IMG/VR virus record: IMGVR_UViG_3300042010_000106
Coordinates: 62,001 to 126,000 of that record
Reading direction: 5' to 3' (one strand)
Length of the DNA stretch: 64,000 nt
The notes beneath the pieces are model-generated. The model made no database searches. It had not been told where the DNA came from and saw nothing but the letters and a program-made list of their open reading frames with translations. The translations under genes were made by a program, and so were the position numbers. Positions 3,509 through 59,728 of the stretch are shown here, piece after piece (position 1 is the first letter of the stretch; each line of letters starts with the position of its first letter).

Positions 3509-3883
3509 GTGTCTTACGGAATTTATTTGAATCAAATCCCCGGCATCATGTACACGACTGGAAGCGACAGTTTGCAATTCCAGTACGTGAAAGACGGGCG
3601 CACCTACAACATTCAAACCGGTCACACCACAATCGACAAACTGAGTGCGCTGGAAAGCTGGCGCAGCGCGGTGTGGATGTACAAGGGTGAAACACCGGAA
3701 GGCGTTTTGGTATTTGAGTACAACGCACCGAATCCAGAAAATCTGGTAGACGTTGAACCGATGCTGCATACGCTCTACCCTGAAAGCTTTATGTGGATCA
3801 CTCCGAAAGGTCTGCCACGTCCACAACCCACGCTGTGGGCGCCGCTGACCGCACCAGCGAAGCGCTACGCGGCTGAACTGTAA
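3509..3883 (+). CDS. hypothetical protein
   Basis: AAGGAG RBS before GTG 3509. Confidence 0.65.
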   Translation: MSYGIYLNQIPGIMYTTGSDSLQFQYVKDGRTYNIQTGHTTIDKLSALESWRSAVWMYKGETPEGVLVFEYNAPNPENLVDVEPMLHTLYPESFMWITPKGLPRPQPTLWAPLTAPAKRYAAEL

Positions 3884-3905
3884 ACTACAACGAAAGGGAT
3901 AACGT

Positions 3906-4109
3906 ATGCAGAGCATTGAACAGTTCGAAAACATCATTGGCATGGATTTGTGCGCGGCCATTGCCGAAGTGACGCACACGGCGATTTGCACCAAGCGTTT
4001 GCCGCACAACGTGCCCGACTACAGCAAGCACGACAAAACCGTTTTGCTCGACGCGCTGATTGCCCGTCTGGAAAACGTGAAGACCCGCATCAATTTGGAG
4101 ATTGCATAA
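3906..4109 (+). CDS. hypothetical protein
   Basis: fills gap, RBS AAGGG. Confidence 0.6.
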   Translation: MQSIEQFENIIGMDLCAAIAEVTHTAICTKRLPHNVPDYSKHDKTVLLDALIARLENVKTRINLEIA

Positions 4110-4694
4110 ATGTACGTTGATTTGTCCACGTCGCAATATATTCCGTTCGGCAAAATGCTCGGCCATCTGTATTACCAAAACCAAGCGCTGCTTGCGCTGG
4201 CACCGGGCCGCAACGGTTATCCACACAACGGCGGTGAACACACGCTGAGCCTGTGCGGCACCAAAGAAGACATCAATGCGTTTCTGGATTTGGTTACTGA
4301 AAAATATCCGTACGTGTTGTGCGAAGCTACCAAGATTCAAATGGCTGTGCGTGAATGGAAAGAAGGCGACCCCATTCTGAAAGCGAAGAAACTTTTCTCG
4401 CAACACATTTACGACTACCACAAAACGTATCAGTACAAAGTGCTTGAAGACATCGTGCACTTTTACCCACGGCCCGGTTTCACACATCAAGAATTCGCGC
4501 TTGAAGCGATTTGCCATCTGGAATTGATCACGGGTTGGGCCATCGACGATTTGCAAATCGACACCGCTGGCATCGTGCACTTCGACGATTTCATGACCGT
4601 TGAAATTTTCCGCCGTGACACAACGGAAAGTTATCGCGCTCGCATTCAAAAGGAACACGCGGGCATCGCTGCGCTTTATGGTGACAGTGAATGA
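4110..4694 (+). CDS. hypothetical protein
   Basis: abuts upstream stop, GGAG RBS. Confidence 0.7.
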   Translation: MYVDLSTSQYIPFGKMLGHLYYQNQALLALAPGRNGYPHNGGEHTLSLCGTKEDINAFLDLVTEKYPYVLCEATKIQMAVREWKEGDPILKAKKLFSQHIYDYHKTYQYKVLEDIVHFYPRPGFTHQEFALEAICHLELITGWAIDDLQIDTAGIVHFDDFMTVEIFRRDTTESYRARIQKEHAGIAALYGDSE

Positions 4695-5062
4695 GTTTTG
4701 AACTGACCCGCATAACCCACTGGAAAGATCGCGGCTACGGTTATTGCGGCGTAATCACTTGTGTTGGCCTTACCGTTCCTGAATCGCTCGACATGGAATT
4801 GCCTGTACTGCCTGAAGGTTGGGAGTGGGGCCAGTTCATGCGAATGCGTAACGCGAAAGAAGGCCCGCCACGCAAAGTGATTTTCTGGCGCAGTGACACA
4901 ATCATTCATTTCGATTGTCATTGCAGCAAAGAGGTTTGGGAAACCCGTGAAGAAAATTGCCCGATCAAAATCATTAAAGCAGCCGCTGAAGAACATGCAA
5001 AGAATGGCAAGCTCAAAGGTAATGACTGGCTTGAGCAGTGGATCAATTTACTCGACCGTTAA
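4691..5062 (+). CDS. hypothetical protein
   Basis: ATGA overlap. Confidence 0.7.
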   Translation: MSFELTRITHWKDRGYGYCGVITCVGLTVPESLDMELPVLPEGWEWGQFMRMRNAKEGPPRKVIFWRSDTIIHFDCHCSKEVWETREENCPIKIIKAAAEEHAKNGKLKGNDWLEQWINLLDR

Positions 5063-5071
5063 GGGGAATGT

Positions 5072-5926
5072 ATGAAAACTGAAGAAAAGAAAATCAAATT
5101 CGGCCCCGGCCATTTTCCAATCGGCACCATCGCCCGCGTTCAAGTGATGGAAGAACCTTACGACTTTCGCGTGGATCGAATTTTCGAACAAAGCGCGCAG
5201 GGTTGGATTCTGGAATCGGATCTAAACCCGAGTGAAGTCACAGGCAAACGCTGCATCAACGTCGGTTGGGTTATCGGTATCGTTTCGCGTGGCACCGGTC
5301 ATTGCAATGTCGTGCCGTATCACGAACCTGTGAAGTTCACGCAGAAGCGTTTCGAAAAACAGGAACCGTATGCAGAACGTTGTGCAGCGTACGGCGTAGG
5401 TAAAAACGAATATCTGTTCGATGACGTCATTAGCGACATTCGTTCAATCGTTTACCACTACCCGCAGTACGCGCACCTCGGCCAGCAGCACCTGTACGAC
5501 TTCAATGCAATTGCTGGCGAAGTCTTGCGGCATGCGCGCCAGCAAACGTGGTACGCCGTAATCATCAACAAAAAGAAATTCCATCGCGTGCTGAAAGCTG
5601 CGCTGGCTCGCTTCAAAGAATCCCGCGCCAAATGCGAAAAGCTGTATCGTGAAGAACAGCAGCGTTGGGGCGATGAACTGATGCGCGACATGTACGATCA
5701 CGACGACGATATGTTGGACGACGAAGAACGAAAAGTTCTGGCCGAACAACACGAACAAGAAGAAAACATTTTTCAGAATGACGGTCTGGACGACGCGCAT
5801 TTTGAGTGTATGTTGGGTGGCGAAGAGCCGTTGCATGACACACCTGAAGATTTGGCGGAATCGTACAACCCGCACGGTGAATCGAACACCATCGTTATGG
5901 ACAACACTTACATGGTACGCAAATGA
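5072..5926 (+). CDS. hypothetical protein with acidic C-terminus (284 aa)
   Basis: AAGGGG RBS, long ORF. Confidence 0.75.
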   Translation: MKTEEKKIKFGPGHFPIGTIARVQVMEEPYDFRVDRIFEQSAQGWILESDLNPSEVTGKRCINVGWVIGIVSRGTGHCNVVPYHEPVKFTQKRFEKQEPYAERCAAYGVGKNEYLFDDVISDIRSIVYHYPQYAHLGQQHLYDFNAIAGEVLRHARQQTWYAVIINKKKFHRVLKAALARFKESRAKCEKLYREEQQRWGDELMRDMYDHDDDMLDDEERKVLAEQHEQEENIFQNDGLDDAHFECMLGGEEPLHDTPEDLAESYNPHGESNTIVMDNTYMVRK

Positions 5927-6411
5927 CAATTCAACGTTCCGAAACATTTAACGCATTCATTGAAACCCTAGTTGGCATTTACCAAAGCAACGAAACGTCT
6001 CGATGTATCTGTAGTGTGCGTATGTTCGAAACGCTTTTCTATCAGCACACGAAAGAAAAGATGGAACGTCACACCCGGCAAATCATCCGCAACGAAATGA
6101 AACGTCGCGGGTACAAAGTCGTTATCGGCCTCGACGTGAGCATTACAAAATTGCCCGTCGTCGAAGTGCCGGTTAAACAATGGCCGATGTTGATTGAAAC
6201 TCTGGTCAACCGGCTGCAAATAAAAGCCAAAGCATCGCCGACACACCGCATGCGTTTCACCCTCAAGCAGTTTCAGGACTTCGCCACCATCTGGCCGACT
6301 GCAAAAGAGTTTGAAGCAAAAGTGGTTGCGGAACTGCGCAAGGTTCGATTGATCGTTTACTTCCATTCGAACCATGTAATCGTTGTGAAGGAAACCCCAT
6401 GTACCCCGTGA
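5923..6411 (+). CDS. hypothetical protein, apparent internal two-domain duplication
   Basis: FIETLV...EMKRRGYKVV vs LIETLV...ELRKVRLIV. Confidence 0.65.
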   Translation: MTIQRSETFNAFIETLVGIYQSNETSRCICSVRMFETLFYQHTKEKMERHTRQIIRNEMKRRGYKVVIGLDVSITKLPVVEVPVKQWPMLIETLVNRLQIKAKASPTHRMRFTLKQFQDFATIWPTAKEFEAKVVAELRKVRLIVYFHSNHVIVVKETPCTP

Positions 6412-7785: not shown

Positions 7786-8439
7786 ATGTTGTCTAATATC
7801 GAAATCAGTGATTTTAAACTTCAGCAAAAGATCGAAGCTTTGCTGGAAGAACTCAACATGGAAGCCCGTCACCACTCCTACAACGGTTACTGTAAATACC
7901 GGGAAGTGGCCGAGGTTCAAAAGGAACTGCATACAGTCATTATGCAGAGCCTGCTTGATCGTGATTTGGAAATCGAGCGTCTGCAAAAAGAACTCGTTCC
8001 ATACCACCGGCGCGATAGTGTGGAAGCACACAACGCAAAACAAAAAGCAAAAGTCGAATTCGTTTTGGATTTGCTTTTCCCGCATGACAGTTACGACAAA
8101 GGCGGTGTGCCGCGTGAGCTTCGCCATCCTGAAAAATACTGGTGGTGGAATGGCTGGTCGCTTCTTGAAGAAAGTGACCCGAACGAAGTAACCGGCAATA
8201 TCAGTGTGGAAGTTGAAAGCTACATTGGTGGCGGTGAAAACGAAAAATTCTCTTTCGATATTCTCGGCGAATGGATCGAACCGGACGACCACGAAGAAAT
8301 CAAAGCGCGTGTGCATGCGTGGTGTCGTACAAGCTACGCAGAAAGGCAGCAAGCCGATCAGGCTAAGCAGCGCAAAGATGCACAGCGCCAAATCGAAGAA
8401 GCCCAACGCACCATCGACCGCCTGAGTGGGAAAGCGTAA
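7786..8439 (+). CDS. hypothetical coiled-coil protein
   Basis: AGGAGG RBS. Confidence 0.75.
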   Translation: MLSNIEISDFKLQQKIEALLEELNMEARHHSYNGYCKYREVAEVQKELHTVIMQSLLDRDLEIERLQKELVPYHRRDSVEAHNAKQKAKVEFVLDLLFPHDSYDKGGVPRELRHPEKYWWWNGWSLLEESDPNEVTGNISVEVESYIGGGENEKFSFDILGEWIEPDDHEEIKARVHAWCRTSYAERQQADQAKQRKDAQRQIEEAQRTIDRLSGKA

Positions 8440-8705: not shown

Positions 8706-10709
8706 ATGAAAAACTTTTCTGTTTTCGGTAAAGCAGTTCACAGCGCCTACGCCACCATTCTGCAAAACGACGCAGGCCGTAAGGATTCCGTTTTCGTGGT
8801 GGACATTACCGGCGACGAATTGTGGGCGCACTATCTCGCATCTTTCCCGGAAGGCACCAACCCGATTTTCCGCACGCGCACTGAATACGATTGTTCGTGC
8901 TGCCGCAACTTCATCAAAAACATCGGCGCGGTTGTCAGTATCAAAGACGGCAAGTTGCAATCGGTTTGGGATATCGAAATCGACGACGAACTTTTCCAGA
9001 CCATCGCCGATTCCATGTCGAAGCTCGTAAAGTCGCTGAACATTGCTGCACCTTTCATGGTGAGCGAACCGGCGTACGGCGCTGAAGTGACCCACCACAA
9101 AGACGAAACGTGGCACCACTTCCACGCAAAAGTGCCAACCATTTTCATGTGGAAGCACAACGAAAGCAATTACATTGGCGAGCGCAAAAACGACTTCGAA
9201 GGTTTGAAGCGTTCGATCAAAGAAATCGACAACGATGCAATTGAACAAGTGGCCGATTTGATCGACCAAGATTCGCTGCACAAAGGCCCGGAATACAAAG
9301 GCAAAGTTGACCTGCTGCGTAAGCTGAAAGCGGCGTACGAGAAACTGAAAACCAAACGCGCACGTGAACTGTTTCTGTGGGCGAACGCCAAGCCGGGTAC
9401 GCGTATTCACAGCACCGTTATCGGTACGCTGTTGGTTGATCTTTCGACCGGTGAAGACCTCGAAATCGCCGTGAAGAAATTCGAAGACAAAGTGAGCGGC
9501 ACCAACTTCAAACGTTCGAAAGCGCTGGTCACTCAAAAGATGATCGACGAAGCGCAAAAGCTCGTTGAAAAGTTGGGCATCGAAGATTCGCTCGCACGTC
9601 GTTTTGCAGTGCGCGAAGATATCAGCGTTAACGACGTTCTGTTCGTTGATGGTTCGGTGAAAAAGAAACTGCTGGGCGGTGCGTTCGACTCGATCAAACC
9701 AACCAAGAAAAACGTTCCTGTTCTGACGGACTTGATCGAAGATATCAGCATCAAAGATTTCCTGAGCAAAGTTCTGCCGAAAGCGGATACGGTCGAAGTG
9801 TTTGTGCAGAATGAACATCAACCAACTTTCGTTTCGCTGATTGCCCCGGTGAATGCCGATTCGAAACCGCTGTTCAAATGGGATAACGGTTTTTCGTGGG
9901 CGTACACTGGTGACGCTACTGAATCCATCCGTGAGCGTGTGAAGAAAGCAGGCGGCAAAGTTGACGGCGATATTCGTATTTCGCTGTCGTGGCACAACGC
10001 AACCGACCTCGATCTGAGCCTGCACAAAAACGGCGCGCACATTTACTACCACAACCGTAATGAGTTCGGCGCTACGCTCGACCTCGACATGAACGGTATC
10101 GACAAGAAAGATTCCGTTGCACCGGTAGAAAACATTGTGTGGCCGCGTCTGGCAAATGCACAACCGGGTACGTACTCGATTGTTGTGCACAACTATGCCA
10201 CACGTGCGACCGCCAACGTCGGCTTTGAAGTTGAAGTCGAAGTGATGGGCAAGCTGTACAGCTACGAAAATGCGAAAGGTTTGCGCGACAACGAGAAAGT
10301 GAAAATCGGCGAAGTAATTATCGCGAAAGGTGGCGAAGTTACTGTCGTTGGTTTGACCGAAGGTGGAGCGTCCAATGAGAAATGGGGCGTGCACACCGAG
10401 ACTTGGACGCCGGTTGATTTGATCACCCGTTCGCCAAACTTCTGGAACGATCAGAAGATCGGTCACGAACACATTTTCTTCATGCTGAAAAATTGCGTAC
10501 GTGATGATAGCGCACGCGGTTTCTACAACGAATACCTGCGTGATGATTTGAATACGCATCGCAAAGTGTTCGAAGTAGTTGGTGCGCAAATGCGTGTGGC
10601 TCCGAACGACCAGCAACTGAGCGGCCTTGGTTTCTCGATCACCAAGCGTGACGAAATCAAAGTGCGCGTGAAGGGTGCGACTAACCGCGTTCTGAACGTG
10701 AAGTTTTAA
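8706..10709 (+). CDS. large conserved phage protein with N-terminal CSCC motif and C-terminal YfaP/DUF2135-like domain
   Basis: YDCSCCRNF; DIRISLSWHNATDLDL...IYY...LDLDMN...VENIVW...GTYSIVVHNY. Confidence 0.75.
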   Translation: MKNFSVFGKAVHSAYATILQNDAGRKDSVFVVDITGDELWAHYLASFPEGTNPIFRTRTEYDCSCCRNFIKNIGAVVSIKDGKLQSVWDIEIDDELFQTIADSMSKLVKSLNIAAPFMVSEPAYGAEVTHHKDETWHHFHAKVPTIFMWKHNESNYIGERKNDFEGLKRSIKEIDNDAIEQVADLIDQDSLHKGPEYKGKVDLLRKLKAAYEKLKTKRARELFLWANAKPGTRIHSTVIGTLLVDLSTGEDLEIAVKKFEDKVSGTNFKRSKALVTQKMIDEAQKLVEKLGIEDSLARRFAVREDISVNDVLFVDGSVKKKLLGGAFDSIKPTKKNVPVLTDLIEDISIKDFLSKVLPKADTVEVFVQNEHQPTFVSLIAPVNADSKPLFKWDNGFSWAYTGDATESIRERVKKAGGKVDGDIRISLSWHNATDLDLSLHKNGAHIYYHNRNEFGATLDLDMNGIDKKDSVAPVENIVWPRLANAQPGTYSIVVHNYATRATANVGFEVEVEVMGKLYSYENAKGLRDNEKVKIGEVIIAKGGEVTVVGLTEGGASNEKWGVHTETWTPVDLITRSPNFWNDQKIGHEHIFFMLKNCVRDDSARGFYNEYLRDDLNTHRKVFEVVGAQMRVAPNDQQLSGLGFSITKRDEIKVRVKGATNRVLNVKF

Positions 10710-10760
10710 CTGTAAAGATCAACCGCAACACAAACACTCTCTTAAATAAATAGGTGCTTT

Positions 10761-15787: not shown

Positions 15788-16170
15788 TTGACTTTGAAAG
15801 ACTGCATTCGTTTCTGCCGGTCTATGCGTACGAATACGAAACCATTGGTGAGACGGTAGACGAAATCACCTATTGGTATCCGCACCAACATCCGGTGGGA
15901 ACGAAACCGCCTGAAGGTTGGACGCGCATTGACCGTGCCGACGAATTCACCCCTGCGCAGTATGCAGCGTTGAAAGCGTTCGAAGAATCGCAATGGTTTC
16001 CGGCAACCGTGGAACCAGAAGAGGAAGCCACTTATATCGTGGAGCTGAATGGCGTTGCAACGAGTGCGTATTTCCGCAAACAAATTCTGTTTGATAGTTG
16101 GGATCAAGGTTGGATCAAGCTCGGAAAATCCGTAGCACCAACACGCTGGCGCCATTTCCCGAAACTGTAA
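15784..16170 (+). CDS. hypothetical protein with DUF551-like C-terminus
   Basis: WFPATVEPEE...W...PTRWRHFPKL. Confidence 0.55.
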   Translation: MIDFERLHSFLPVYAYEYETIGETVDEITYWYPHQHPVGTKPPEGWTRIDRADEFTPAQYAALKAFEESQWFPATVEPEEEATYIVELNGVATSAYFRKQILFDSWDQGWIKLGKSVAPTRWRHFPKL

Positions 16171-16182
16171 AGGTTACTCACG

Positions 16183-16411: not shown

Positions 16412-17044
16412 ATGCGCACTATCGAAGCAGCACGCCGCGTTACCAAGACCGAAGAAAATTGCGATGACATTCCGCATCTGGATCGCGCTATCGCCCGGCT
16501 GTTTGAAATCGACAGTATCGAATACAATCCGAAGTGGGGTAACTGGTCTGGTGAATATCCAGAACGTGCCCGCCTGAAAGGCTATTGGATTAACAAGTGG
16601 ATGTGCACCGATACGCACGTGGGTGAAATGGCGTATTTCCTTGATGATGAACTGGTGTTTACTTGCGAACAAACCGCACGTAAAGACAATGCGTACCTGT
16701 ACTTCGTTGATCAGGCCGCGTACGACAAAGTAAAAGTTTTCATCGACCAATACCGTCTGCCTGACGAACTGGATGCGCCTGAATTTATCGGCGACCAAGA
16801 AACGAAAGACGAAATCAAACACAAATATGCTGATAGCTGCCTGCATCGTGTTGGCATGTATCAAGATCGCGAAGTTAAAGTCGGTCACATTCCGTACGAC
16901 ATTCGCCGCGATCTGAATCTGCCCGGTTGCGAATCTGATTTTTTCTACAGCCTGTTCCCGTACGTTTATATTTATGACAACGACGTTCGCTCGATTGTAA
17001 ATATCAGCGAACTCACTTTCTGTCTGCACATCGACGGTAAATAA
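16412..17044 (+). CDS. conserved phage hypothetical protein (WxCTDTxVG motif)
   Basis: YWINKWMCTDTHVGEMAYFLDDE. Confidence 0.7.
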   Translation: MRTIEAARRVTKTEENCDDIPHLDRAIARLFEIDSIEYNPKWGNWSGEYPERARLKGYWINKWMCTDTHVGEMAYFLDDELVFTCEQTARKDNAYLYFVDQAAYDKVKVFIDQYRLPDELDAPEFIGDQETKDEIKHKYADSCLHRVGMYQDREVKVGHIPYDIRRDLNLPGCESDFFYSLFPYVYIYDNDVRSIVNISELTFCLHIDGK

Positions 17045-17930: not shown

Positions 17931-18971
17931 ATGATGGATATTCTGCTGTATTGCTGCGTGGCTTTGTTGGGAGGTTACGCCGCTTACAAATACACTAACC
18001 ATGTGCAGCTCGCATGGATCGTTAGTGCTGCTGGTTCAATCGTTGCCGTTATCTTTTTCTACGTGGCCCTGTGGCTGTCTGCGTCTTCGTACGAAATCAT
18101 TAGCGGCACCGTGACAGACAAAGAAGTTGTTTACGATCCGACAACCGAATCATATTCGTGTGGTACGGATTCCAAAGGCAACAGCAAAACCTGTACGCGA
18201 ACCGTGCCGCGCTGGCGCTTTGACGTAGAAGCCGACGTAGGCAGTTGGTACGATTATTCCTACAGCCGCTGGAACGTGCCAAGCATTTATGAGAATGCAA
18301 AAATTGGCGAACCGTTCGCGAAAGAAAAAATGTTCATGAACTATCAGTACGTGAACGATGAAACGGTTTTGGTGAACAAGCTCGACGCGTACGAAGGCTG
18401 GTTGCCTGAATACCCAAGCGTTTACGAAGGCTACAAAGTTCATCGCGCTTTTTCGAATGTGGTCAACGTATCCGAACTGAATGCTGCGCTGGCGAAAGCC
18501 GAACAAGTGTGGGGCAAGAAATTCGGCGTGAACGTAATCGTCAACGTCGTGCCTGAAAAAGAAGCAGGTTTCGCCAATGCCCTGCGCAACAAATGGGTAG
18601 GCGGCAAAAAGAACGATGTTGTTTTGACTCTCTACGTCAACGCAGAACACCGCGTTACGAAAGCAAACGTTTTCAGCCGGTCTACCTCGACCAAGCGCAC
18701 GGATACGTTCGCCGATTTCAATACAACGCTTCGTGAAAACGCACAACGAATTGACACGCTCGCTACGCAGAAAATCATTGGCGTTATCGACGCAGCTTTG
18801 CCACTGTTCGAACGTGAAGACTTAGCAGAGCATGACTTCGGCGCCACGTCGTATAGCGCTGCGTGGTACATAAACGCATTGGGCATATTCGTTGTTTTGC
18901 TCACCTGTTTCGGAACTGTAAAGTGGTTGGGCGGGCAACGTAGTTTCCGCCGTAGCTCATGGGCACGCTGA
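17931..18971 (+). CDS. conserved phage membrane protein (2 N-terminal TM, large periplasmic domain, C-terminal TM)
   Basis: YSC...KTCTRT motif, W-x-GGKKNDVV motif, TM helices. Confidence 0.75.
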   Translation: MMDILLYCCVALLGGYAAYKYTNHVQLAWIVSAAGSIVAVIFFYVALWLSASSYEIISGTVTDKEVVYDPTTESYSCGTDSKGNSKTCTRTVPRWRFDVEADVGSWYDYSYSRWNVPSIYENAKIGEPFAKEKMFMNYQYVNDETVLVNKLDAYEGWLPEYPSVYEGYKVHRAFSNVVNVSELNAALAKAEQVWGKKFGVNVIVNVVPEKEAGFANALRNKWVGGKKNDVVLTLYVNAEHRVTKANVFSRSTSTKRTDTFADFNTTLRENAQRIDTLATQKIIGVIDAALPLFEREDLAEHDFGATSYSAAWYINALGIFVVLLTCFGTVKWLGGQRSFRRSSWAR

Positions 18972-21211: not shown

Positions 21212-22068
21212 AATATTTAGTCTTTCGTATCCTGACTGTCGGTGATCTGTACGTTCATTCGCACATGAGCTTTCACGACCATCTGTGTCATATCGACGTT
21301 GCCGAAGGCAACAAACAAGTGATGGCGACCGCGTTCGGTTCTACGCCAAACAATGTCGAAGTTATCGGCGCAGGTTTTATCGAATTCGACGCGATTGGTC
21401 AGCCAGTTTGCTACGGTTATTCCGACAGTCTGAACATTAACAGCCGGGGCAAACTGGATAGCGAAATCATCCGTGCGAGCATGCTGCAACTGAGTGAATA
21501 CAATCCAAACAAACTGGATGAATTGTTTGGGCAGTTCGATCAATGCCGCCGCGCCAACGAAGAAATTTTGACTGCGTTGAAAGACAAAGAATTCGTGCTG
21601 ACCCAACGCGCTGGCGTACTGGTGCCAAGCAACAGTATCGAAATGGATATGCGCGCCGATTGCATCAAGCCTTTCAATATCGTGAAATTCCGTAACATCG
21701 TTGCAGTGAACGGTCAGACGTACTTTGTTTTCGACGTGAACGGTGACGACTACCTGTTCAAATACGGTGTGCTGTCTACGCTGATCAAGCACGATCAAAT
21801 GACCGCCGTTCTGGTACGTAATGATGATCCGTACGACATTGCAAAATTCAACGGCATCACGTTCACATGCAACGTTCCAGATTACGATATCCCGAAAGGC
21901 GCGTTCTGTTTTGTACGTGAAATCGTGTTCGAAGAATTCCACGACCCTGACTTCGTAAGCGCCGCCGTGGGCACAGTGAAATTAACTGTAAATGACGAAG
22001 AGCGCACAATCGAAATGAAGCTGATCGACTTGTGCCATATGGTTCACACAGGACAGGAAGAAGAATGA
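21208..22068 (+). CDS. hypothetical protein with conserved phage N-domain (GAGF...CYGxSxSL)
   Basis: MKYLV...H...VIGAGF...CYGYSDSLNINSR; weak paralogy to 59492-59728. Confidence 0.7.
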   Translation: MKYLVFRILTVGDLYVHSHMSFHDHLCHIDVAEGNKQVMATAFGSTPNNVEVIGAGFIEFDAIGQPVCYGYSDSLNINSRGKLDSEIIRASMLQLSEYNPNKLDELFGQFDQCRRANEEILTALKDKEFVLTQRAGVLVPSNSIEMDMRADCIKPFNIVKFRNIVAVNGQTYFVFDVNGDDYLFKYGVLSTLIKHDQMTAVLVRNDDPYDIAKFNGITFTCNVPDYDIPKGAFCFVREIVFEEFHDPDFVSAAVGTVKLTVNDEERTIEMKLIDLCHMVHTGQEEE

Positions 22069-29953: not shown

Positions 29954-30497
29954 AATCGCTTTAGACAATTATTTGTACAAATCTGGATGGGCCATGTACG
30001 TCATGTACAGGCATGCAATTCGGTTTCCACAAATGTACAGAATTGAATTGCACGAAGAAAATGGACGCTACGTAGCGGCGATGGCCGTTAAGGTGCGCAG
30101 CAGTCCCACGCGCAAATCGAACAAGTACACCGTTGCCGTTTTTGTAGACCTTACTTATCGTCGCAAAGGCATAGGCACAAAACTGCTGGCCCTTTTGGGC
30201 GACGACATCCGTAAATGCAAAGCAGGCAGCGGCGTTTCAGGTTCGCTAGATTTCTGGCGAGCCAACAACGTTACGTGTTTCACCGATCAGGATCATGCAG
30301 ATTGGGAAACCACTCTGACCGACATTGAAATAGACCAAAGGGAATTGGAAAAATGTTCCACAAACCAAAAGCCAAACTTGCTATCGAACGTTTCCTGCAT
30401 CGCTACGAAGTCCGCCACACGGTTGAAAGAAACCCTAGTGAAGTCGTGCACACGTACACGTTCCTCGCCAAAGGAAAACAGTTACCAATCCATGTAA
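29925..30497 (+). CDS. GNAT-family acetyltransferase
   Basis: motif A VFVDLTYRRKGIGTKLL; motif B-like SLDFW; C-terminal tail overlaps the next gene. Confidence 0.65.
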   Translation: MNLSTVQKAEIALDNYLYKSGWAMYVMYRHAIRFPQMYRIELHEENGRYVAAMAVKVRSSPTRKSNKYTVAVFVDLTYRRKGIGTKLLALLGDDIRKCKAGSGVSGSLDFWRANNVTCFTDQDHADWETTLTDIEIDQRELEKCSTNQKPNLLSNVSCIATKSATRLKETLVKSCTRTRSSPKENSYQSM

Positions 30498-30661
30498 CTG
30501 TAAAGGAAAGACAGGAACGCGGTTTCTTCTTTCCTCGCAATACCCGCTACGAATGCAAAAGCAACAACACGCTGCACACGCGCCATTTCAGCACACTAGA
30601 AAAACTGGTGTGTCATTTGGTTGTCCTTCAAGAAAAGAAAGATAGGATGGGCATAAAATGA
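30353..30661 (+). CDS. hypothetical protein
   Basis: ATGA-coupled to next gene. Confidence 0.55.
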   Translation: MFHKPKAKLAIERFLHRYEVRHTVERNPSEVVHTYTFLAKGKQLPIHVTVKERQERGFFFPRNTRYECKSNNTLHTRHFSTLEKLVCHLVVLQEKKDRMGIK

Positions 30662-30993: not shown

Positions 30994-31575
30994 ATGATTA
31001 CCGTCACTTACATTGTTGAAGCGTCAACGTTCGGCTGTAATCTTGCGCTGAATGATTCGCAGGCCATTCGGATTTTTAACCAACTGGAAGGCAAGACCGA
31101 AGGCAACATAACTATTGCCAACGAATTCGCCTTCGACGTTTTGCGCACGTTGATTGGTGAAGACAAAATCAGTTTTGAACACGTCGAATTGGTTTTGCAC
31201 CTCAAGGACAAAATCACGCGCCATCGTTTCAACACGTTCGGCAATCTGCTGACCGAAGACGGCACCGGGCCTTTCCACTTCGAAACGCCTAGCGACATGA
31301 TCATGCACCGCCGCTGGCACGCAATCGCCGCCAAACAGCGTGTACGGCGTTTAGAGCGCGATAAGCGATTGCAGGCAGAGAAGGAGGCGCGTTTAGGGCT
31401 AACGATCCCTGAGCCTATACTACAGGCCGTTCTGGCTGAAGACGCGGAGTGTCGTAAACGCTTGGGCCTAACTGAATGCACAGAACAGCTCATGACGCCC
31501 GGTGCCGATGTTGACGCCGCGTTAGCGCATGCGTCTACGGTTTTGGGATTGCCCACCACCGAATCAAAACTGTAA
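30994..31575 (+). CDS. hypothetical protein with DUF3696-like (ATPase C-terminal) segment
   Basis: NEFAFDVLRTLIGEDKISFEHVELV...RFNTFGNL. Confidence 0.45.
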   Translation: MITVTYIVEASTFGCNLALNDSQAIRIFNQLEGKTEGNITIANEFAFDVLRTLIGEDKISFEHVELVLHLKDKITRHRFNTFGNLLTEDGTGPFHFETPSDMIMHRRWHAIAAKQRVRRLERDKRLQAEKEARLGLTIPEPILQAVLAEDAECRKRLGLTECTEQLMTPGADVDAALAHASTVLGLPTTESKL

Positions 31576-31583
31576 AGGGGTAC

Positions 31584-35272: not shown

Positions 35273-35684
35273 TGTGAAATTCATCAACACTTTGACGCAA
35301 GAACAGTGGGCCGAACTTGGGGAACTTCGTAGGGCCTGTGGCCGATTCAACCAACGTCGCATACACGGCTATAGCCTCACTAACGAAGATCGCGAAAAGT
35401 TTGCAGAAGACAAACCCAAGCTCGCTGCGATGAACGAAGCATTCGGCATCACGGGTGTGTCGATCTACGTCACTATGAAAAATGTAAACGATGAATATCT
35501 TTACGACATCGTAGAGGCGCCGCCGTTCCTGCACAAAGACTGCATGCTGCCCGCGTTGATTGAATTCATCATTAGCACAATCGACGACCGACACAACGCG
35601 CCTTCGGCTTTCAACGCAGAACGCCCGTGGGAATTCTGGAATATTCAAATGCCTGCAAATAAAGGCATTCTTCGGAGACTGTAA
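35262..35684 (+). CDS. hypothetical protein
   Basis: GGAGG RBS before ATG 35262. Confidence 0.65.
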   Translation: MFRSVKFINTLTQEQWAELGELRRACGRFNQRRIHGYSLTNEDREKFAEDKPKLAAMNEAFGITGVSIYVTMKNVNDEYLYDIVEAPPFLHKDCMLPALIEFIISTIDDRHNAPSAFNAERPWEFWNIQMPANKGILRRL

Positions 35685-35685
35685 A

Positions 35686-38236: not shown

Positions 38237-38489
38237 ATATGACGCACGTTTGTTGAAGCGCAGAAACCGCACACAGCGCCGCGTAGACGAAGATCGCAAC
38301 CACGTGCGTGCAATGGTCAAAGCGTTGAATGAAAAGACGCGGTTAGAAATCGCGTTGATCAAGTACCTTGAGAAAAAGGGTGTGAGTGTCGAGGAAACTA
38401 GGGCCGCGCTGGAAAGTGTAAAGACAGCTCAAGCCGATGAACACTTTCACCTTTTGTGGAACCTGTTGGAGAAACCGTATGTCACCTGA
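38229..38489 (+). CDS. basic hypothetical protein
   Basis: packed ORF. Confidence 0.6.
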   Translation: MPEYDARLLKRRNRTQRRVDEDRNHVRAMVKALNEKTRLEIALIKYLEKKGVSVEETRAALESVKTAQADEHFHLLWNLLEKPYVT

Positions 38490-41370: not shown

Positions 41371-41700
41371 ATGAAGCCTAGCAAATACGTAATCGCGTGC
41401 GGTGGTGTGCTGGCTGTATTTGCGGCCCTAGCTTTGTGGGGCCTTTCCGCCAGTATCGGGCGACTCAACGCAGCATCGAACGCAACGAACCTTGCACAGA
41501 ATGAAGCGGTGCCTGAAGTCGTGGTTATTTCAACGTTCTTTTCTGGCGAGATTCGCGGCCAGTCGTTCTACGTGAAAAGCACCGACAAGCTTTGTCACCT
41601 GACCACAACAAACGTTTTGATTTCCGGCGCGCTCGACTGCAAACAACCTTCGATGACTGACTATCGCAAGATCGCTGCTGTCGTCGGTATCAAACTGTAA
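41371..41700 (+). CDS. membrane-anchored/secreted protein
   Basis: N-terminal TM, two Cys. Confidence 0.65.
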   Translation: MKPSKYVIACGGVLAVFAALALWGLSASIGRLNAASNATNLAQNEAVPEVVVISTFFSGEIRGQSFYVKSTDKLCHLTTTNVLISGALDCKQPSMTDYRKIAAVVGIKL

Positions 41701-41709
41701 AGGTGATAC

Positions 41710-44888: not shown

Positions 44889-44931
44889 TTCCCCGCTGTA
44901 AAAACCCAACTCCTAAAAAGGAAAGCATCAA

Positions 44932-48104: not shown

Positions 48105-48140
48105 AACTGTAAAGAATGAGGGACAGTTTCATTGTCCCTC
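48105..48140 (+). promoter_or_regulatory. AACTGTAAAG motif followed by leader stem-loop
   Basis: intergenic motif, then GAGGGACAG-TTTCA-TTGTCCCTC, then TAAGGAG RBS. Confidence 0.5.
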
Positions 48141-52821: not shown

Positions 52822-53351
52822 AAGATTTCCTGAAAAGCATCGAAACGTATTTGAGTTTTGCAGAAGGCGAAGGTGAGCCAGCAAACCGTGCTGCATTGCA
52901 CGCACGCGCCAAAGAGCTTTTGGAACAGTTGGAAAGTGGGCGCGCTGAATTCAACGAACTGCGCACCTACTGGTTTTTCTGGAACGGTTCCGGTGACATG
53001 ACAATCAGCACCGGTTCCAGTCCTGAAGACGCTTTTACCAAAGCTGGATACGGCGGCGGGGCTATGCGTGCACTCGACTACTATACAGTTGTGTATTACG
53101 GTCGCGCATTGTTGGACTGCAATTTGGCGTGGCCTGATAAAGCGGGTGATCAACGCAAAGTGTTGGAACACGTCATTGCTGAAATCCCTAAAGCGTTTGC
53201 GGGATTGTCCAAAGAGGAAATGCTGGAACCACTCGACGATTTGTCGTACATGGTGATCAAGGCAGAAGAACGTTTCGGCGCCGAGCATTTCGTTCACGCT
53301 GAGTTGCATACGGCTTACGTGGCCGCGTGGGACAACTACAAAAAACTGTAA
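52818..53351 (+). CDS. hypothetical protein
   Basis: ATGA overlap; DAFTKAGYGGGAMRALDYY motif. Confidence 0.7.
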   Translation: MKDFLKSIETYLSFAEGEGEPANRAALHARAKELLEQLESGRAEFNELRTYWFFWNGSGDMTISTGSSPEDAFTKAGYGGGAMRALDYYTVVYYGRALLDCNLAWPDKAGDQRKVLEHVIAEIPKAFAGLSKEEMLEPLDDLSYMVIKAEERFGAEHFVHAELHTAYVAAWDNYKKL

Positions 53352-53363
53352 AGTGAGTGTGTT

Positions 53364-53660: not shown

Positions 53661-54139
53661 TTCGCTATCCAGAATTGATCGTTAACGGGCATACGCACAG
53701 CGGTAAAACTGCTTCGATTCTTGCGGCAGCGATGGCGCACAAAGAGAAGACCGGACACGAAACAATTTTCGTGAACGACGAAGACAATCTGCTGCAAATT
53801 GCACAGCGTGTTTTGATTGCGAAAGGCATCGACGTTAGCGACGAAAACCTCGACAAAGAAAAAGCAGAAGCTGCGTTGCGTGCTGGCCCGCATCTGACTA
53901 CACCACGTGCTTTGCCACGGCTGCTGGAAAAGCTGAACCCTACCGGTGAAGCTGGAACGAACATCGCAATCTTTCTGGATGCGCCGCTGATGTGTGCCGT
54001 TGAAATGAACACCTTCGGCGCCGGGAATAACGGTAAGCGTTTCCGTATGGGTGTGAACATCAATGACCCACTCGGCGAGACTGTAAAGAACTACAGCATT
54101 CACGCTGTATCCATTCAAAACTACATCATGCCCCAATAA
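53657..54139 (+). CDS. truncated RecA/DnaB-like P-loop protein
   Basis: LIVNGHTHSGKT Walker A; IFVNDE..LLQIAQRVL; IFLD Walker B-like; only 160 aa. Confidence 0.5.
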   Translation: MIRYPELIVNGHTHSGKTASILAAAMAHKEKTGHETIFVNDEDNLLQIAQRVLIAKGIDVSDENLDKEKAEAALRAGPHLTTPRALPRLLEKLNPTGEAGTNIAIFLDAPLMCAVEMNTFGAGNNGKRFRMGVNINDPLGETVKNYSIHAVSIQNYIMPQ

Positions 54140-58263: not shown

Positions 58264-58534
58264 CAGCCATGGCGAACTGTAAATGGTACGTATGCCGTCT
58301 TGCTGGCGGCGAATACATTCACTCACTTGACGAAACACATACAAAGGTAATGTCGTGCAAAAGCAGAATCCGGGCGCAGCAGTTCACACTTCCCGAAGCC
58401 GAGAAAATCAAAGCAAAGATAGCGTGCGAAATCATACCCGCACATTGGGAACGAATCCCATAGTTCCAAACGCTGCGCAGTCAAAAGAACTCGACCGCCT
58501 TTTTGGCATGTGGGACAAGCTATAAGGATTACAT

Positions 58535-58942
58535 ATGAATATTATTATGGATTACGACGACAATCTCGCACGTCGTATTGCAAGCTACGCAGTAAAGAAC
58601 AAGAAAACGTTTGAAGAAGTCGTGTTTGAAACACTGGATAAAGCGCTGCCCGTAGAGCGTACGGTTTGTGTGGCGCTTAAACCGATGACCGACACTGACC
58701 GCGATGAAATGTTTCGCGTCAATTGGGCGTTGAACATTAATCGTTTGTACGAAGCTGTGCAGCGTTTGGAAGTCGGGCAAAAATGTTCCTTCGACTATCT
58801 GCTTACGCCAGAACAACAACGTATGACGAACCGCAAAAAAGCGGCGTGGCGGCGTGCCCTGTATCGCTGGTCAATGGGTAACGAGAATTACACCGTAACA
58901 CTGCTGGTTGATGGCGGTACTACGGTTAAACGCAACAGCTAA
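58535..58942 (+). CDS. ribbon-helix-helix protein with C-terminal domain
   Basis: MNIIMDYDDNLARRIASYAVKNKKTFEEVVFETL. Confidence 0.55.
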   Translation: MNIIMDYDDNLARRIASYAVKNKKTFEEVVFETLDKALPVERTVCVALKPMTDTDRDEMFRVNWALNINRLYEAVQRLEVGQKCSFDYLLTPEQQRMTNRKKAAWRRALYRWSMGNENYTVTLLVDGGTTVKRNS

Positions 58943-58956
58943 AAGGAACTGTAAAC

Positions 58957-59253
58957 ATGAAAGAATGGCACGAAGTATTTTCCGCAGCGTTTTCCGCAGC
59001 GATCAAATTCACGATTGCATTGCAGCCGAAGAACGCGCCGACCGTTGAAATCGTTGACGACCCACACGCCGTGCAAGTGGAGTGGGAAACCGACAAATTC
59101 ACCGCGTCTTTCTGGTTCTACGAAAATCGCACGTACGAATATCGCATTGTTTTTCATCCTGAAGGTTTTCAAATTCAGTTGCCAGACCTTGAAGGCGAAG
59201 ACGTTAGCGTTGACGCACCTATCAACGAAGAATTTATCCGTCTGTTGAGGTAG
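58957..59253 (+). CDS. hypothetical protein
   Basis: AAGGA RBS. Confidence 0.6.
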   Translation: MKEWHEVFSAAFSAAIKFTIALQPKNAPTVEIVDDPHAVQVEWETDKFTASFWFYENRTYEYRIVFHPEGFQIQLPDLEGEDVSVDAPINEEFIRLLR

Positions 59254-59491
59254 TCATGAACGAAACAGGTTTTCCAAAAGGTTCCGCGCTCGACAACGCT
59301 TTGTGGCCGCTGAAATATGCGACCACTAAAAAGACGTTGGTAGATTTCACGCCGCAGGTAATCGAAAACGCTTCAAAACTGCTGGCTGATTTCGACGCGG
59401 CGTTCCCTGCAATAAAAGCGCTGGCGGATCTTGACCGTGAACAGCGCCACAAAGTTTCCCCTCAACTGCAACAAATTCCCCGGAGCAAATA

Positions 59492-59728
59492 ATGAAATAT
59501 CTCGTAGTTTCTATCGACGGTAAAGAAGCGTCTATGATCATCGGCAAAGGCATCGACGTTGACAAGATCGTTGATGCACTCGGCGCCAAAGTGGTCAGCG
59601 GTGGCGATGCAGTTGTTCACCAAATGTTCATCACGTGCCAAGGGACAATAACTGTAAAGGGTAACGAGGTTGGTAGCCGTGGCATGAAAGACGAAGTGCT
59701 GCTGCGCCACGCGGATTTCATCGAGTAA
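59492..59728 (+). CDS. hypothetical protein, weak paralog of 21208 N-domain
   Basis: MKYLVV...VVSGG...CQG...SRG.KD..LL. Confidence 0.55.
   Translation: MKYLVVSIDGKEASMIIGKGIDVDKIVDALGAKVVSGGDAVVHQMFITCQGTITVKGNEVGSRGMKDEVLLRHADFIE

What the first reader, a model, noticed from the sequence alone, without database searches (positions are those of the whole stretch)
3876..59659. Strand-specific ACTGTAAA motif, at least 16 copies: candidate phage promoter element
Seen on the + strand at about 3877, 7889, 10709, 16164, 18915, 21985, 30497, 31569, 35678, 41694, 48106, 53345, 54080, 58276, 58948 and 59651, with consensus AACTGTAAAG. About one copy of a given 8-mer per strand is expected by chance in 64 kb, and I noticed none on the - strand. 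Many copies overlap a Leu-stop (CTG TAA), but others are intergenic (48106, 58948) or in other frames, mostly within ~100 nt upstream of a start codon. Inference: a recognition element for a phage sigma factor or RNA polymerase, analogous to the T4 late TATAAATA box, or an RNA-processing site.
Basis: seen in the sequence. Interest (0 to 1): 0.65.

Follow-up and report, generated by a model that had tools for sequence, protein, structure and literature searches.

The report
Jumbo-phage middle-gene promoter box ACTGTAAA
The repeated, strand-specific ACTGTAAA word is real and is most likely the core of a phage-specific promoter for the replication-phase ("middle") genes of a soil jumbo phage related to Pseudomonas phage Lu11, where the same box was already annotated as a putative promoter but, as far as I could find, never tested.

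Summary
In detail: ACTGTAAA occurs 16 times on the + strand of the window and never on the - strand. Shuffles give a mean of 1.9 and a maximum of 7.

The window lies in a complete 312-kb jumbo-phage genome related to Pseudomonas phages HRDY3, Lu11 and PaBG.
- Genome-wide there are 62 copies, and 61 point the same way as the local genes.
- It is the most over-represented 8-mer in the genome.
- Half the copies lie in the 5% of sequence that is non-coding or stop codon.
- 59% lie within 100 nt upstream of a start codon, against 15% for random positions.
- A synonymous-codon shuffle does not explain it.
- The core is strict, has no -35 partner, and has a conserved purine 8 nt downstream. This matches -10 box to +1 geometry.
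- It is kept upstream of orthologous genes in relatives down to 36% sigma identity.

Lu11's GenBank record already marks this box as "putative middle/late promoter".

Two further promoter classes exist: sigma70-type with a conserved leader (early) and TAATTTA before structural genes (late). ACTGTAAA is therefore the middle class.

The genome has no detectable multisubunit RNA polymerase but encodes a sigma70-family protein. Which factor reads the box is unresolved. No RNA data exist, so transcription starts are inferred, not shown.

The parts
3877..3884 (+). ACTGTAAA box. Its TAA is the stop codon of ORF 3485-3883. The next start is 3906, 21 nt downstream. Predicted +1 is A at 3893.
7889..7896 (+). 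ACTGTAAA box inside ORF 7786-8439, 543 nt before its end. It is poorly placed, so it may be an internal promoter or one of the roughly 10 chance in-coding copies expected genome-wide.
10709..10716 (+). ACTGTAAA box. The stop TAA of the 667-aa ORF 8706-10709 overlaps its first A. The next start is 10761, 44 nt downstream. Predicted +1 is G at 10725. The downstream gene has orthologues in HRDY3 and Lu11.
16164..16171 (+). ACTGTAAA box. Its TAA is the stop codon of ORF 15784-16170. The next start is 16183, 11 nt downstream. Predicted +1 is A at 16180, which would give a near-leaderless mRNA.
18915..18922 (+). ACTGTAAA box inside ORF 17931-18971, 49 nt before its end. The next called gene is 19092-19646 (PHROG 1383, annotated virion structural protein), which has orthologues in HRDY3, Lu11 and PaBG.
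21985..21992 (+). ACTGTAAA box inside ORF 21184-22068, 76 nt before its end. The next start is 22065, 72 nt downstream. Predicted +1 is A at 22001.
30497..30504 (+). ACTGTAAA box. The stop TAA of ORF 29916-30497 overlaps its first A. The next called start is 30658, 153 nt downstream. Predicted +1 is A at 30513.
31569..31576 (+). ACTGTAAA box. Its TAA is the stop codon of ORF 30994-31575. The next start is 31584, 7 nt downstream. This is the only window copy without a purine at index 16 (T at 31585).
35678..35685 (+). ACTGTAAA box. Its TAA is the stop codon of ORF 35157-35684. It heads the run of small genes that includes the 167-aa sigma-region-4-like ORF 36384-36887.
41694..41701 (+). ACTGTAAA box. 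Its TAA is the stop codon of ORF 41371-41700. The next ATG at 41710 coincides with the predicted +1, so this is a candidate leaderless mRNA.
48106..48113 (+). ACTGTAAA box in the intergenic gap after ORF 46602-48080. A stem-loop begins near the predicted +1 (G at 48122). The next start is 48155.
53345..53352 (+). ACTGTAAA box. Its TAA is the stop codon of ORF 52818-53351. The next ATG is 53364 (alternative call 53388). Predicted +1 is G at 53361.
54080..54087 (+). ACTGTAAA box inside ORF 53657-54139, 52 nt before its end. The next start is 54155, 67 nt downstream. The downstream gene has orthologues in HRDY3 and Lu11.
58276..58283 (+). ACTGTAAA box 13 nt after the stop of ORF 57676-58263, within a doubtful 64-aa ORF. 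The next robust gene starts at 58535.
58948..58955 (+). ACTGTAAA box in the intergenic gap between ORFs 58535-58942 and 58957-59253. The start codon lies 1 nt after the box, so a transcript starting at 58964 would miss it and serve the genes further downstream.
59651..59658 (+). ACTGTAAA box inside ORF 59492-59728, 70 nt before its end. The next start is 59742, 83 nt downstream. The downstream gene has orthologues in Lu11 and PaBG.
16994..17001 (+). Candidate weak site ATTGTAAA (variant at the tolerant position 1), 45 nt before start 17047, with A at index 16.
38415..38422 (+). Candidate weak site AGTGTAAA, 56 nt before start 38479, with A at index 16.
44895..44902 (+). Candidate weak site GCTGTAAA (variant at the tolerant position 0), 29 nt before start 44932.

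Best explanation
ACTGTAAA is the invariant core of a phage-specific promoter of the -10-only type, with no -35 element.

Predicted geometry: the full element reads a-A-A-C-T-G-T-A-A-A-[G/T]-[A/G]. If the conserved purine 8 nt past the core is +1, then TAAAKR occupies -12..-7 and TG lies directly upstream.

It marks the middle (replication-phase) transcription class of a Lu11-like jumbo phage. The phage has no detectable multisubunit RNA polymerase genes, so the host core enzyme must be redirected by a phage factor. The leading candidate is the phage's 337-aa sigma70-family protein (genome 223901-224914, outside the window). An earlier-expressed factor is the alternative.

Because genes are packed end to end, the box is often written into the last codons of the preceding gene (Leu-stop, CTG TAA) or inside it.

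Shown here: the motif statistics, its strand and position rules, its conservation, the three-class partition, and the sigma fold.

For: Statistics
- 16 vs 0 copies in the window.
- 62 copies genome-wide, 61 sense and 1 antisense; it is the top 8-mer with z = 19.7.
- Orientation flips with every gene-strand block, including the lone + copy at 177312 in the short + block.

Placement
- 31 copies lie in 17.5 kb of non-coding or stop-codon sequence, where about 0.5 are expected.
- 31 in-coding copies compare with 10.4 +/- 2.9 (max 19) in 200 synonymous-codon shuffles.
- 36 of 61 lie 100 nt or less upstream of the next start, against 15% for random positions (p = 6e-15).
- Copies sit in divergent intergenic gaps (177312 +, 261188-261195 -), where no upstream sense transcript is expected.
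- Upstream of the DNA polymerase gene, all four phages show the order terminator hairpin, box, gene. Terminator T-tails end 2-14 nt before 10 boxes.

Promoter anatomy
- Purine at index 16 in 55/62 copies (p = 1.7e-9). The same holds in HRDY3 (44/51) and Lu11 (34/37). No other flanking conservation and no -35.
- The core TGTAAA tolerates no substitution.

Conservation
- The exact box is kept upstream of orthologues in HRDY3 (10/20) and Lu11 (9/19), against 6% and 2% of other genes, at about 50% protein identity.
- It is kept at the sigma/SSB junction in four uncultivated relatives down to 36% sigma identity.

Prior annotation
- Lu11's GenBank record marks 20 'putative middle/late promoter' features. 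18 of them contain this box.

Class partition
- Sigma70-type promoters with a conserved leader form an early class.
- TAATTTA precedes endolysin, sheath, head, baseplate and fibre genes.
- ACTGTAAA precedes DNA polymerases, clamp loader, topoisomerase II, SSB/RecA and thymidylate synthase.

Machinery
- No RNA polymerase beta or beta' domains were found.
- The genome encodes a sigma70-family protein: Pfam region 2, PHROG 17569, a profile match to RpoD regions 1.2-2.4, and Foldseek top hits that are all sigma70.
Against: - There are no RNA data. The phage is found only in DNA metagenomes, so no 5' end has been seen.
- In several copies the next start codon lies 0-11 nt after the box (window 31569, 35678, 41694, 58948, 16164). 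A transcript starting 8 nt downstream would be leaderless or would miss that gene's start.
- About 18 copies lie deep inside genes. About 10 are expected by chance.
- The sigma gene itself belongs to the ACTGTAAA regulon. A copy lies 42 nt before it in relative L074, and in Lu11 it sits in an operon headed by two copies. By analogy with T4 gp55 and SPO1 gp33/34, this fits a late sigma as well as a self-activating middle sigma.
- The enrichment of terminators upstream of boxes is only marginal (p = 0.057).
- PaBG has only 9 copies.
Confidence: 0.78

Rival explanations
1. RNA-level signal. ACUGUAAA in the transcript is a cleavage or processing site for a host or phage endoribonuclease (compare T4 RegB cutting GGAG in early mRNAs), or a stop-restart translation signal at gene junctions.
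For: - The motif is sense-strand only and lies at gene junctions.
- In 12 of 62 copies its TAA is the upstream stop codon, and it is often followed by G-rich, Shine-Dalgarno-like bases.
- In several copies the next start lies 0-11 nt downstream, which is awkward for a promoter.
- No RNA data exist to exclude this.
Against: - Copies occur in all usable frames and in intergenic DNA.
- Copies sit in divergent gaps, where a sense transcript would have to begin inside the opposite-strand gene.
- Copies sit just downstream of terminators.
- The conserved purine 8 nt downstream and the -10-like A/T-rich composition are promoter features.
- The motif partitions cleanly from two other promoter-like classes by gene function.
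Confidence: 0.08
2. Regulator binding site. The box binds a phage transcription factor (an activator or co-activator in the manner of the T4 MotA box, or a repressor or antiterminator). It would then not be the -10 element itself.
For: - The phage encodes several small helix-turn-helix proteins. Examples are window ORFs 8440-8691 and 36384-36887 with sigma-region-4-like HTH and homologues of Lu11 'transcriptional regulators'.
- The 8-bp core is stricter than most -10 elements.
Against: - No -10-like element (TAnnnT) is conserved 11-13 bp or more downstream of the box. Only the single purine at index 16 is conserved, so there is no separate core promoter for an activator to serve.
- The box is asymmetric, which is unlike most repressor operators.
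- The distance to start codons is often too short to fit another promoter downstream.
Confidence: 0.1
3. Polar DNA motif unrelated to gene expression, such as a Chi-like recombination signal or a replication- or packaging-oriented word. It would be co-oriented with genes only because genes follow replication direction.
For: - The density of about 1 per 5 kb and the strong strand polarity resemble Chi or KOPS-type words.
- The phage encodes RecA-, SbcCD- and RecB/Cas4-like proteins.
Against: - Orientation switches at every gene-strand boundary, even for the 7-kb + block at 177-184 kb.
- Placement is strongly biased to the 100 nt before start codons and to non-coding DNA.
- The box is conserved upstream of particular orthologous genes.
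- It is absent from the 39-kb and 13-kb structural blocks.
- It is A/T-rich, unlike the G-rich Chi sequences I recall for E. coli and other bacteria (my own knowledge, not tested here).
Confidence: 0.02
4. Composition artefact: the enrichment follows from codon usage and the preference for the TAA stop codon (Leu-stop, or Thr-Val-Lys in frame).
For: - 12 copies use the TAA of the box as a stop codon.
- 25 of 30 in-gene copies are in frame ACT-GTA-AAn.
- Synonymous-codon shuffles still give about 10 in-coding copies.
Against: - There are 31 in-coding copies against 10.4 +/- 2.9 (max 19) in 200 shuffles.
- 31 copies lie in 17.5 kb of non-coding or stop sequence, where about 0.5 are expected.
- It is the top-ranked 8-mer against a 3rd-order Markov model.
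- Single-base variants are not enriched.
- Flanking positions outside the core are conserved.
Confidence: 0.01

Closest known systems
'Putative middle/late promoter' features in the GenBank record of Pseudomonas phage Lu11 (NC_017972; Adriaenssens et al. 2012, J Virol 86:6369)
   Same: - It is the same sequence. Each 16-nt feature starts at the C of ACTGTAAA and ends at the conserved purine, for example CTGTAAATATAGGACA before the DNA polymerase gene.
- 18 of the 20 features contain the exact 8-mer.
- They have the same co-orientation and the same orthologous positions: DNA polymerase, SSB, and the divergent gap next to the baseplate genes.
   Different: - In Lu11 this is a bioinformatic annotation. 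I found no experimental test, and the announcement itself is not in the held library.
- Position 8 is T in Lu11 (36/37) but G or T here.
- Lu11 has 37 copies, of which 19 are unannotated. This genome has 62.
- The label 'middle/late' can now be narrowed to middle, because a separate TAATTTA box, not annotated in Lu11, precedes the structural genes.
Bacteriophage T4 late promoter TATAAATA (read by gp55 with gp33 and the gp45 clamp). T4 facts are from general knowledge; gp33 orthologues in this phage group are reported in PMC7824862.
   Same: - It is a strict 8-bp A/T-rich -10-region box with no -35 element.
- It is used by host core RNA polymerase carrying a phage factor.
- The Lu11-type consensus TGTAAATA differs from TATAAATA at one base.
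- The spacing to the presumed start agrees within 1 nt.
   Different: - TATAAATA itself is not enriched here (3 sense, 7 antisense).
- The G at position 2 and the upstream AAAC are invariant or strongly conserved.
- The box serves replication genes and small ORFs, not structural genes.
- The only clear phage sigma is a 337-aa sigma70-like protein with a C-terminal domain, not a gp55-type minimal sigma.
Bacterial extended -10 promoters (TGnTATAAT) read by primary sigma70 (consensus and the role of T at -7 are from general knowledge)
   Same: A TG dinucleotide lies directly upstream of a TA-starting hexamer. No -35 element is needed. A purine start lies about 7 nt after the hexamer.
   Different: - The hexamer is TAAAKR, with A or G where sigma70 requires T at -7.
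- There is no spacer base between TG and the hexamer.
- AAAC upstream is also conserved.
- The host-type promoters in this genome look quite different (TTGACN-N16-17-TAnnnT).
Phage sigma cascades such as Bacillus phage SPO1 (gp28 for middle genes, gp33/34 for late genes; from general knowledge and PMC13401047)
   Same: There are three temporal promoter classes. The first is host-type. The later two are phage-specific and partition by gene function.
   Different: - SPO1 middle and late promoters have both -35 and -10 elements.
- Here only one full sigma gene is evident for two phage-specific classes, so at least one reader is unidentified.

Membership tests
Lu11-type putative middle promoter (clade-specific box) | Sequence (A)CTGTAAA followed by T/G, then A/G, with a purine 8 nt after the core | tested here: met
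   62 exact cores. Position 8 is G or T in 53/62 copies. Purine at index 16 in 55/62. Lu11 features span exactly C(1) to purine(16).
Lu11-type putative middle promoter (clade-specific box) | Co-oriented with, and shortly upstream of, genes | tested here: met
   61 of 62 copies are in sense orientation. 59% lie 100 nt or less upstream of a start, against 15% for random positions.
Lu11-type putative middle promoter (clade-specific box) | Present at orthologous positions in related phages | tested here: met
   HRDY3 10/20 and Lu11 9/19, against 6% and 2% of other genes. The DNA polymerase upstream region in four phages. The SSB upstream region in four uncultivated relatives.
Lu11-type putative middle promoter (clade-specific box) | Transcripts actually start there | not testable with these tools
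   No RNA run holds this phage. No transcriptome of Lu11, HRDY3 or PaBG was found in the literature.
T4-type late promoter | Box TATAAATA at -10 | tested here: not met
   The core has an invariant G where T4 has A. TATAAATA occurs 3 times in sense and 7 times in antisense.
T4-type late promoter | Drives late (virion and lysis) genes | tested here: not met
   The structural blocks at 138-177 kb and 184-197 kb have no copy. In Lu11 the box precedes replication genes, while TAATTTA precedes structural genes.
T4-type late promoter | No -35 element | tested here: met
   No information content above 0.3 bits upstream of position -3 in the pooled set of 159 sites.
T4 middle promoter (MotA box plus sigma70 -10) | A separate -10 TAnnnT 11-13 bp downstream of the box | tested here: not met
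   Only the purine at index 16 is conserved downstream.
Host sigma70 promoter (including extended -10) | T at -7 of the -10 hexamer, and a -35 TTGACA or a TGn spacer | tested here: not met
   Position 9 (-7) is A or G. There is no -35. True host-type promoters elsewhere in the genome look different.
Sigma70 family (for the 337-aa candidate reader, genome 223901-224914) | Region 2 (-10 recognition and melting domain) | tested here: met
   Pfam PF04542 at 24.6-26.7 bits, at or over the cut-off. The profile aligns to RpoD regions 1.2-2.4, E = 4e-6. All top Foldseek hits are sigma70.
Sigma70 family (for the 337-aa candidate reader, genome 223901-224914) | Region 4 (-35 recognition and flap binding) | tested here: inconclusive
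   A confident three-helix C-terminal domain (residues 283-333) follows a disordered linker. Foldseek alignments span full-length sigma70. There is no Pfam region 4 hit.
Sigma70 family (for the 337-aa candidate reader, genome 223901-224914) | Binds host core RNA polymerase and initiates at ACTGTAAA | not testable with these tools
   This needs in vitro transcription or pull-down. The position of the sigma gene inside the ACTGTAAA regulon leaves open that it is the late sigma.

The most novel reading that the evidence does not exclude
The box and the clade's sigma70-family protein form a previously uncharacterised sigma/promoter pair. A full-length sigma would read a strict 10-12-bp, -35-independent element (aAACTGTAAAKR). 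The pair would be conserved across a large, mostly uncultivated clade of soil and water jumbo phages, down to 36% sigma identity. It would be the middle tier of a three-tier cascade: sigma70-type promoters with a conserved leader, then ACTGTAAA, then TAATTTA.

A more unusual variant is that the 337-aa sigma reads the late TAATTTA box, and ACTGTAAA is read by a still unidentified early factor, for example one of the 'minimal' single-HTH sigma-like proteins encoded in the window.
Probability: 0.45. Interest if true: 0.5.

Novelty: new member of a known kind. Interest (0 to 1): 0.38.

Why it matters
- It gives a sequence handle on the temporal programme of a poorly studied jumbo-phage lineage (Lu11, HRDY3, PaBG and many uncultivated soil relatives). 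Most genes in these phages have no known function. A gene's promoter class says when it acts, so the roughly 130 small ORFs of this window can be sorted into early and middle sets.
- It defines a concrete, testable sigma/promoter problem: one sigma gene and two phage-specific boxes.
- It offers compact, very specific promoter parts that could serve as orthogonal expression signals in Pseudomonas.
- It does not reveal a new kind of mechanism. Phage-specific promoters read by host RNA polymerase with phage factors are classic, and this box had already been flagged in Lu11.

Tried and rejected
- Megablast of 8 kb of the window against deposited phages found nothing. Relatives were found by protein search instead.
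- Literal literature searches for ACTGTAAA and TGTAAATA returned only primer or eukaryotic noise.
- The Lu11 genome announcement (PMC3372202) is not held. The earlier prediction is therefore cited from the GenBank features only.
- The codon and stop-codon bias explanation was tested and rejected.
- A tandem-repeat explanation for the 8-copy cluster at 231.8-233.8 kb was rejected. Only acidic-codon repeats lie nearby.
- A simple sigma70 and terminator scan of window 1-20000 showed no enrichment of either.
- Terminator-before-box enrichment is only marginal.
- The 167-aa window protein (36384-36887) has a region-4 Pfam hit at the threshold. Its model is mediocre (pLDDT 75.6) and has no significant Foldseek match. 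No claim is made that it is a sigma factor.
- The search for a T7-type single-subunit RNA polymerase gave no hit, but its control also gave none, so it is uninformative.
- PaBG shows little orthologous conservation of the exact 8-mer (1/15), although all 9 of its copies are in sense orientation.
- No alternative genetic code was needed or used.

Full report
**1. Observation**

ACTGTAAA occurs 16 times on the + strand of the window, at exactly the coordinates given, and never on the - strand. Dinucleotide-preserving shuffles give a mean of 1.94 and a maximum of 7 for both strands together. The flanks extend the consensus to r-A-A-ACTGTAAA-[G/T]-[A/G]. All 132 genes I call in the window are on the + strand, so the strand bias could simply mean "same direction as transcription". 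The whole genome tests this.

**2. Genomic setting**

The window is bases 62001-126000 of a single 312,325-bp contig with 48.7% G+C. It is an IMG/VR virus record with direct terminal repeats, rated complete.

The DNA polymerase is 73% identical to that of Pseudomonas phage HRDY3 (313.7 kb), 72% to Lu11 (280.5 kb) and 53% to PaBG. The DNA is found only in rhizosphere and soil metagenomes.

A crude gene call gives 483 genes covering 95% of the sequence, arranged in five large strand blocks.

**3. The motif follows transcription through the whole genome**

There are 62 copies genome-wide.
- + strand copies lie only in the + gene blocks: 20.6-134.7 kb, 177.3 kb and 263-310 kb.
- - strand copies lie only in the - block at 197.7-261.2 kb.
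- In sense orientation the count is 61 to 1.
- ACTGTAAA is the most over-represented of all 8-mers against a third-order Markov model (z = 19.7).
- The antisense word is, if anything, depleted: 1 observed against 4.6 expected.

**4.

- 31 copies touch non-coding DNA or a stop codon. That sequence totals 17.5 kb, where about 0.5 copies are expected.
- The other 31 copies lie fully inside coding codons. 200 genomes with synonymous codons shuffled within each gene give 10.4 +/- 2.9 (maximum 19).
- 36 of 61 copies end 100 nt or less upstream of the next co-oriented start codon, against 15% of random sense positions (p = 6e-15).
- Only 12 copies use the TAA of the motif as the upstream stop codon. 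In-gene copies use both stop-free frames.

Codon or stop-codon bias is therefore rejected. About 10 of the deep in-gene copies may be chance occurrences.

**5. Anatomy**

- The core is very strict. Pooled over this genome, HRDY3 and Lu11, no substitution in TGTAAA behaves like a site. Only position 0, and weakly position 1, is tolerant.
- Nothing is conserved further upstream, so there is no -35 element.
- Downstream there is one conserved position, a purine exactly 8 nt after the core. It is present in 55/62 copies here (p = 1.7e-9), 44/51 in HRDY3 and 34/37 in Lu11.
- If that purine is +1, TAAAKR lies at -12..-7 and TG lies directly before it. This is the geometry of a -10-region promoter.
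- The Lu11 consensus TGTAAATA is one base from the T4 late box TATAAATA. TATAAATA itself is not enriched here (3 sense, 7 antisense).

**6. Placement that argues for DNA-level initiation rather than an RNA signal**

- Two copies lie in divergent intergenic gaps: 177312 (+), 52 nt before the start at 177372, and 261188-261195 (-), 40 nt before the start at 261147. No upstream sense transcript is expected in either gap.
- Upstream of the DNA polymerase gene, this phage, HRDY3, Lu11 and PaBG all show the same order. A terminator-like hairpin with a T-tail comes first, then AAACTGTAAAT, then the start codon 25-45 nt later.
- In 10 of 150 sites a terminator-like hairpin precedes the box, with the T-tail ending 2-14 nt before it. 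The enrichment over control is only marginal (p = 0.057).

**7. Conservation**

- Motif counts are 51 in HRDY3, 37 in Lu11 and 9 in PaBG. The reversed-word control gives 7, 5 and 3. The strand rule is the same in each.
- Genes with the box within 200 nt upstream keep the exact 8-mer upstream of their reciprocal-best orthologue in 10/20 cases (HRDY3) and 9/19 (Lu11). The figures for other genes are 11/191 and 4/182 (p = 1e-6 and 4e-8). The proteins are only about 50% identical.
- I fetched four uncultivated relatives through the sigma protein, with 68, 49, 45 and 36% sigma identity and 39-54% G+C. All carry (A)CTGTAAAT 35-60 nt before the SSB-like gene next to the sigma gene. One has the variant ATTGTAAA.

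**8. Prior knowledge**

The Lu11 GenBank record carries 20 regulatory features labelled "putative middle/late promoter". Each is 16 nt, running from the C of ACTGTAAA to the conserved purine. 18 of them contain the exact 8-mer.

The element had therefore been predicted in a relative in 2012. I found no experimental test:
- The PaBG papers and two jumbo-phage reviews report the sigma gene but no promoter study for this clade.
- Searches for transcriptomes found none.
- The Lu11 announcement itself is not held.

**9. Three promoter classes, which place this one in the middle**

*Late class.* A second strand-exclusive intergenic word, gTAATTTA(a/t)-N3-5-TAta, lies 20-100 nt upstream of genes in exactly the blocks that lack ACTGTAAA: 138-177 kb, 184-197 kb and 1-12 kb.
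- It is strand-exclusive in HRDY3 (9:0), Lu11 (13:0) and PaBG.
- In annotated Lu11 it precedes the endolysin, three tail-sheath genes, the head operons, the PAAR/baseplate genes, the fibre region and virion proteins.

*Early class.* A third class has host-type promoters, TTGAC(A/G/T)-N16-17-TAnnnT. Each is followed by a conserved leader of about 65 nt ending in CTCACGGATCtAAGGaAGTTTa-ATG. These lie at 41.9-60.7 kb and a few other places, including one in the window.

*Middle class.* ACTGTAAA precedes DNA polymerases, clamp loader, topoisomerase II, SSB/RecA, thymidylate synthase and many small ORFs.

The divergent gap at 177.3 kb carries TAATTTA on one strand and ACTGTAAA on the other. Lu11 has the same arrangement. 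The simplest reading is early (host sigma70), middle (ACTGTAAA), late (TAATTTA).

**10. Machinery**

No RNA polymerase beta or beta' domain is detectable, with positive controls. The test for a T7-type enzyme had no working control.

The genome encodes one clear sigma70-family protein of 337 aa at 223901-224914 (-).
- Pfam region 2 matches.
- PHROG 17569 "RNA polymerase sigma factor" matches over the full length.
- A 43-sequence profile aligns to RpoD regions 1.2-2.4.
- An AlphaFold model (pLDDT 79) has E. coli sigma70 in holoenzyme complexes as all its top Foldseek hits.
- The family has 118 clusters, many on contigs of 200-314 kb.

Which box this sigma reads cannot be decided here. Its gene lies inside the ACTGTAAA regulon: a box lies 42 nt before it in relative L074, and in Lu11 it sits in an operon headed by two boxes. 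This fits either a self-reinforcing middle sigma or, by analogy with T4 gp55 and SPO1 gp33/34, a late sigma made from a middle promoter.

Two small window proteins have a sigma-region-4-like HTH: 8440-8691 (83 aa) and 36384-36887 (167 aa). The larger one gave no significant structural match, so no role is claimed for it.

**11. Difficulties**

- In several copies the next start codon lies 0-11 nt after the box. A start at index 16 would then give a leaderless mRNA (window 41694, where the ATG coincides with the predicted +1) or would skip that gene (window 58948).
- A cluster of eight copies lies at 231.8-233.8 kb. It includes four in-gene copies at about 335-nt spacing, all with the full consensus. 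The cluster is conserved in Lu11 (gp161-164) and HRDY3 and is not explained by a repeat. It may be a stack of promoters feeding the downstream genes.
- No transcript 5' end has been observed.

**12. Verdict**

The promoter interpretation is well supported by independent lines of sequence evidence and by an earlier annotation in Lu11. The element belongs to the middle class rather than the late class. It is a new instance of a known kind, with modest added value:
- the fixed +1 purine;
- the three-class map;
- the deep conservation with the sigma family;
- the unannotated late box.

Noticed in passing
window 32784-32790 (+); genome 139926, 143399, 152629, 163038, 170561, 177348, 194383 (-) and others: A second strand-exclusive intergenic box, gTAATTTA(a/t)-N3-5-TAta, lies 20-100 nt before genes of the structural blocks. 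It is 20 sense to 2 antisense here, 9:0 in HRDY3 and 13:0 in Lu11, and it is the top word in PaBG. In Lu11 it precedes endolysin, sheath, head, baseplate and fibre genes, but it is not annotated there. It is probably the late promoter.
   Followed up: partly
window about 43713-43802 (+); genome 41.9, 44.6, 49.7, 50.7, 55.1, 60.7, 217.5, 238.7 and 238.9 kb: Host-type promoters (TTGACN-N16-17-TAnnnT) are followed by a conserved leader of about 65 nt, ...GCAATTATGCC-N13-CTCACGGATCtAAGGaAGTTTa-N2-4-ATG. This is probably the early class. The conserved leader could be a regulatory RNA or translation element.
   Followed up: partly
genome 231780-233812 (-), L010:14780-16812: Eight ACTGTAAA copies lie within 2 kb. 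Four are in-gene at about 335-nt spacing with the full consensus, one is at a gene junction, and two are in tandem in the next gap. The cluster is conserved in Lu11 (gp161-164) and HRDY3. It lies upstream of a 191-aa gene and a 180-aa extremely acidic (Asp/Glu repeat) protein.
   Followed up: partly
window 36384-36887 (+) and 8440-8691 (+): Two small proteins (167 and 83 aa) match only the helix-turn-helix of sigma70 region 4, at the Pfam threshold. They may be the 'minimal sigma' or flap-binding factors discussed for this phage group (PMC7824862). The fold search for the larger one was inconclusive.
   Followed up: partly
genome 207362-210658 (-), L009:10362-13658: A 1098-aa protein contains an intein splicing domain (Pfam PF14890, E = 1e-21). 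In Lu11 the terminase large subunit lies in the corresponding region.
   Followed up: no
genome 16217-19834 (+), L001:16217-19834: A 1205-aa protein has a T6SS VgrG3-like C-terminal domain (E = 6e-53) and a VanY-type peptidase domain. It is probably a tail spike or cell-wall-degrading virion protein.
   Followed up: no
L071:1960-2187 and 3393-3980 (uncultivated relative, next to its sigma gene): Genes with Tad2-like and Tad3 Pfam families (anti-Thoeris sponge families) flank the sigma gene of a 280-kb relative.
   Followed up: no
whole genome, sense strand: The words GACGAAGA, GAAGACGA and GACGACGA occur 76-101 times in sense orientation against 1-3 in antisense. This reflects very frequent acidic Asp/Glu codon runs in the proteins. 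CTCGACGA and ACCTCGAC are also strand-biased (39:3 and 23:1) and remain unexplained.
   Followed up: no
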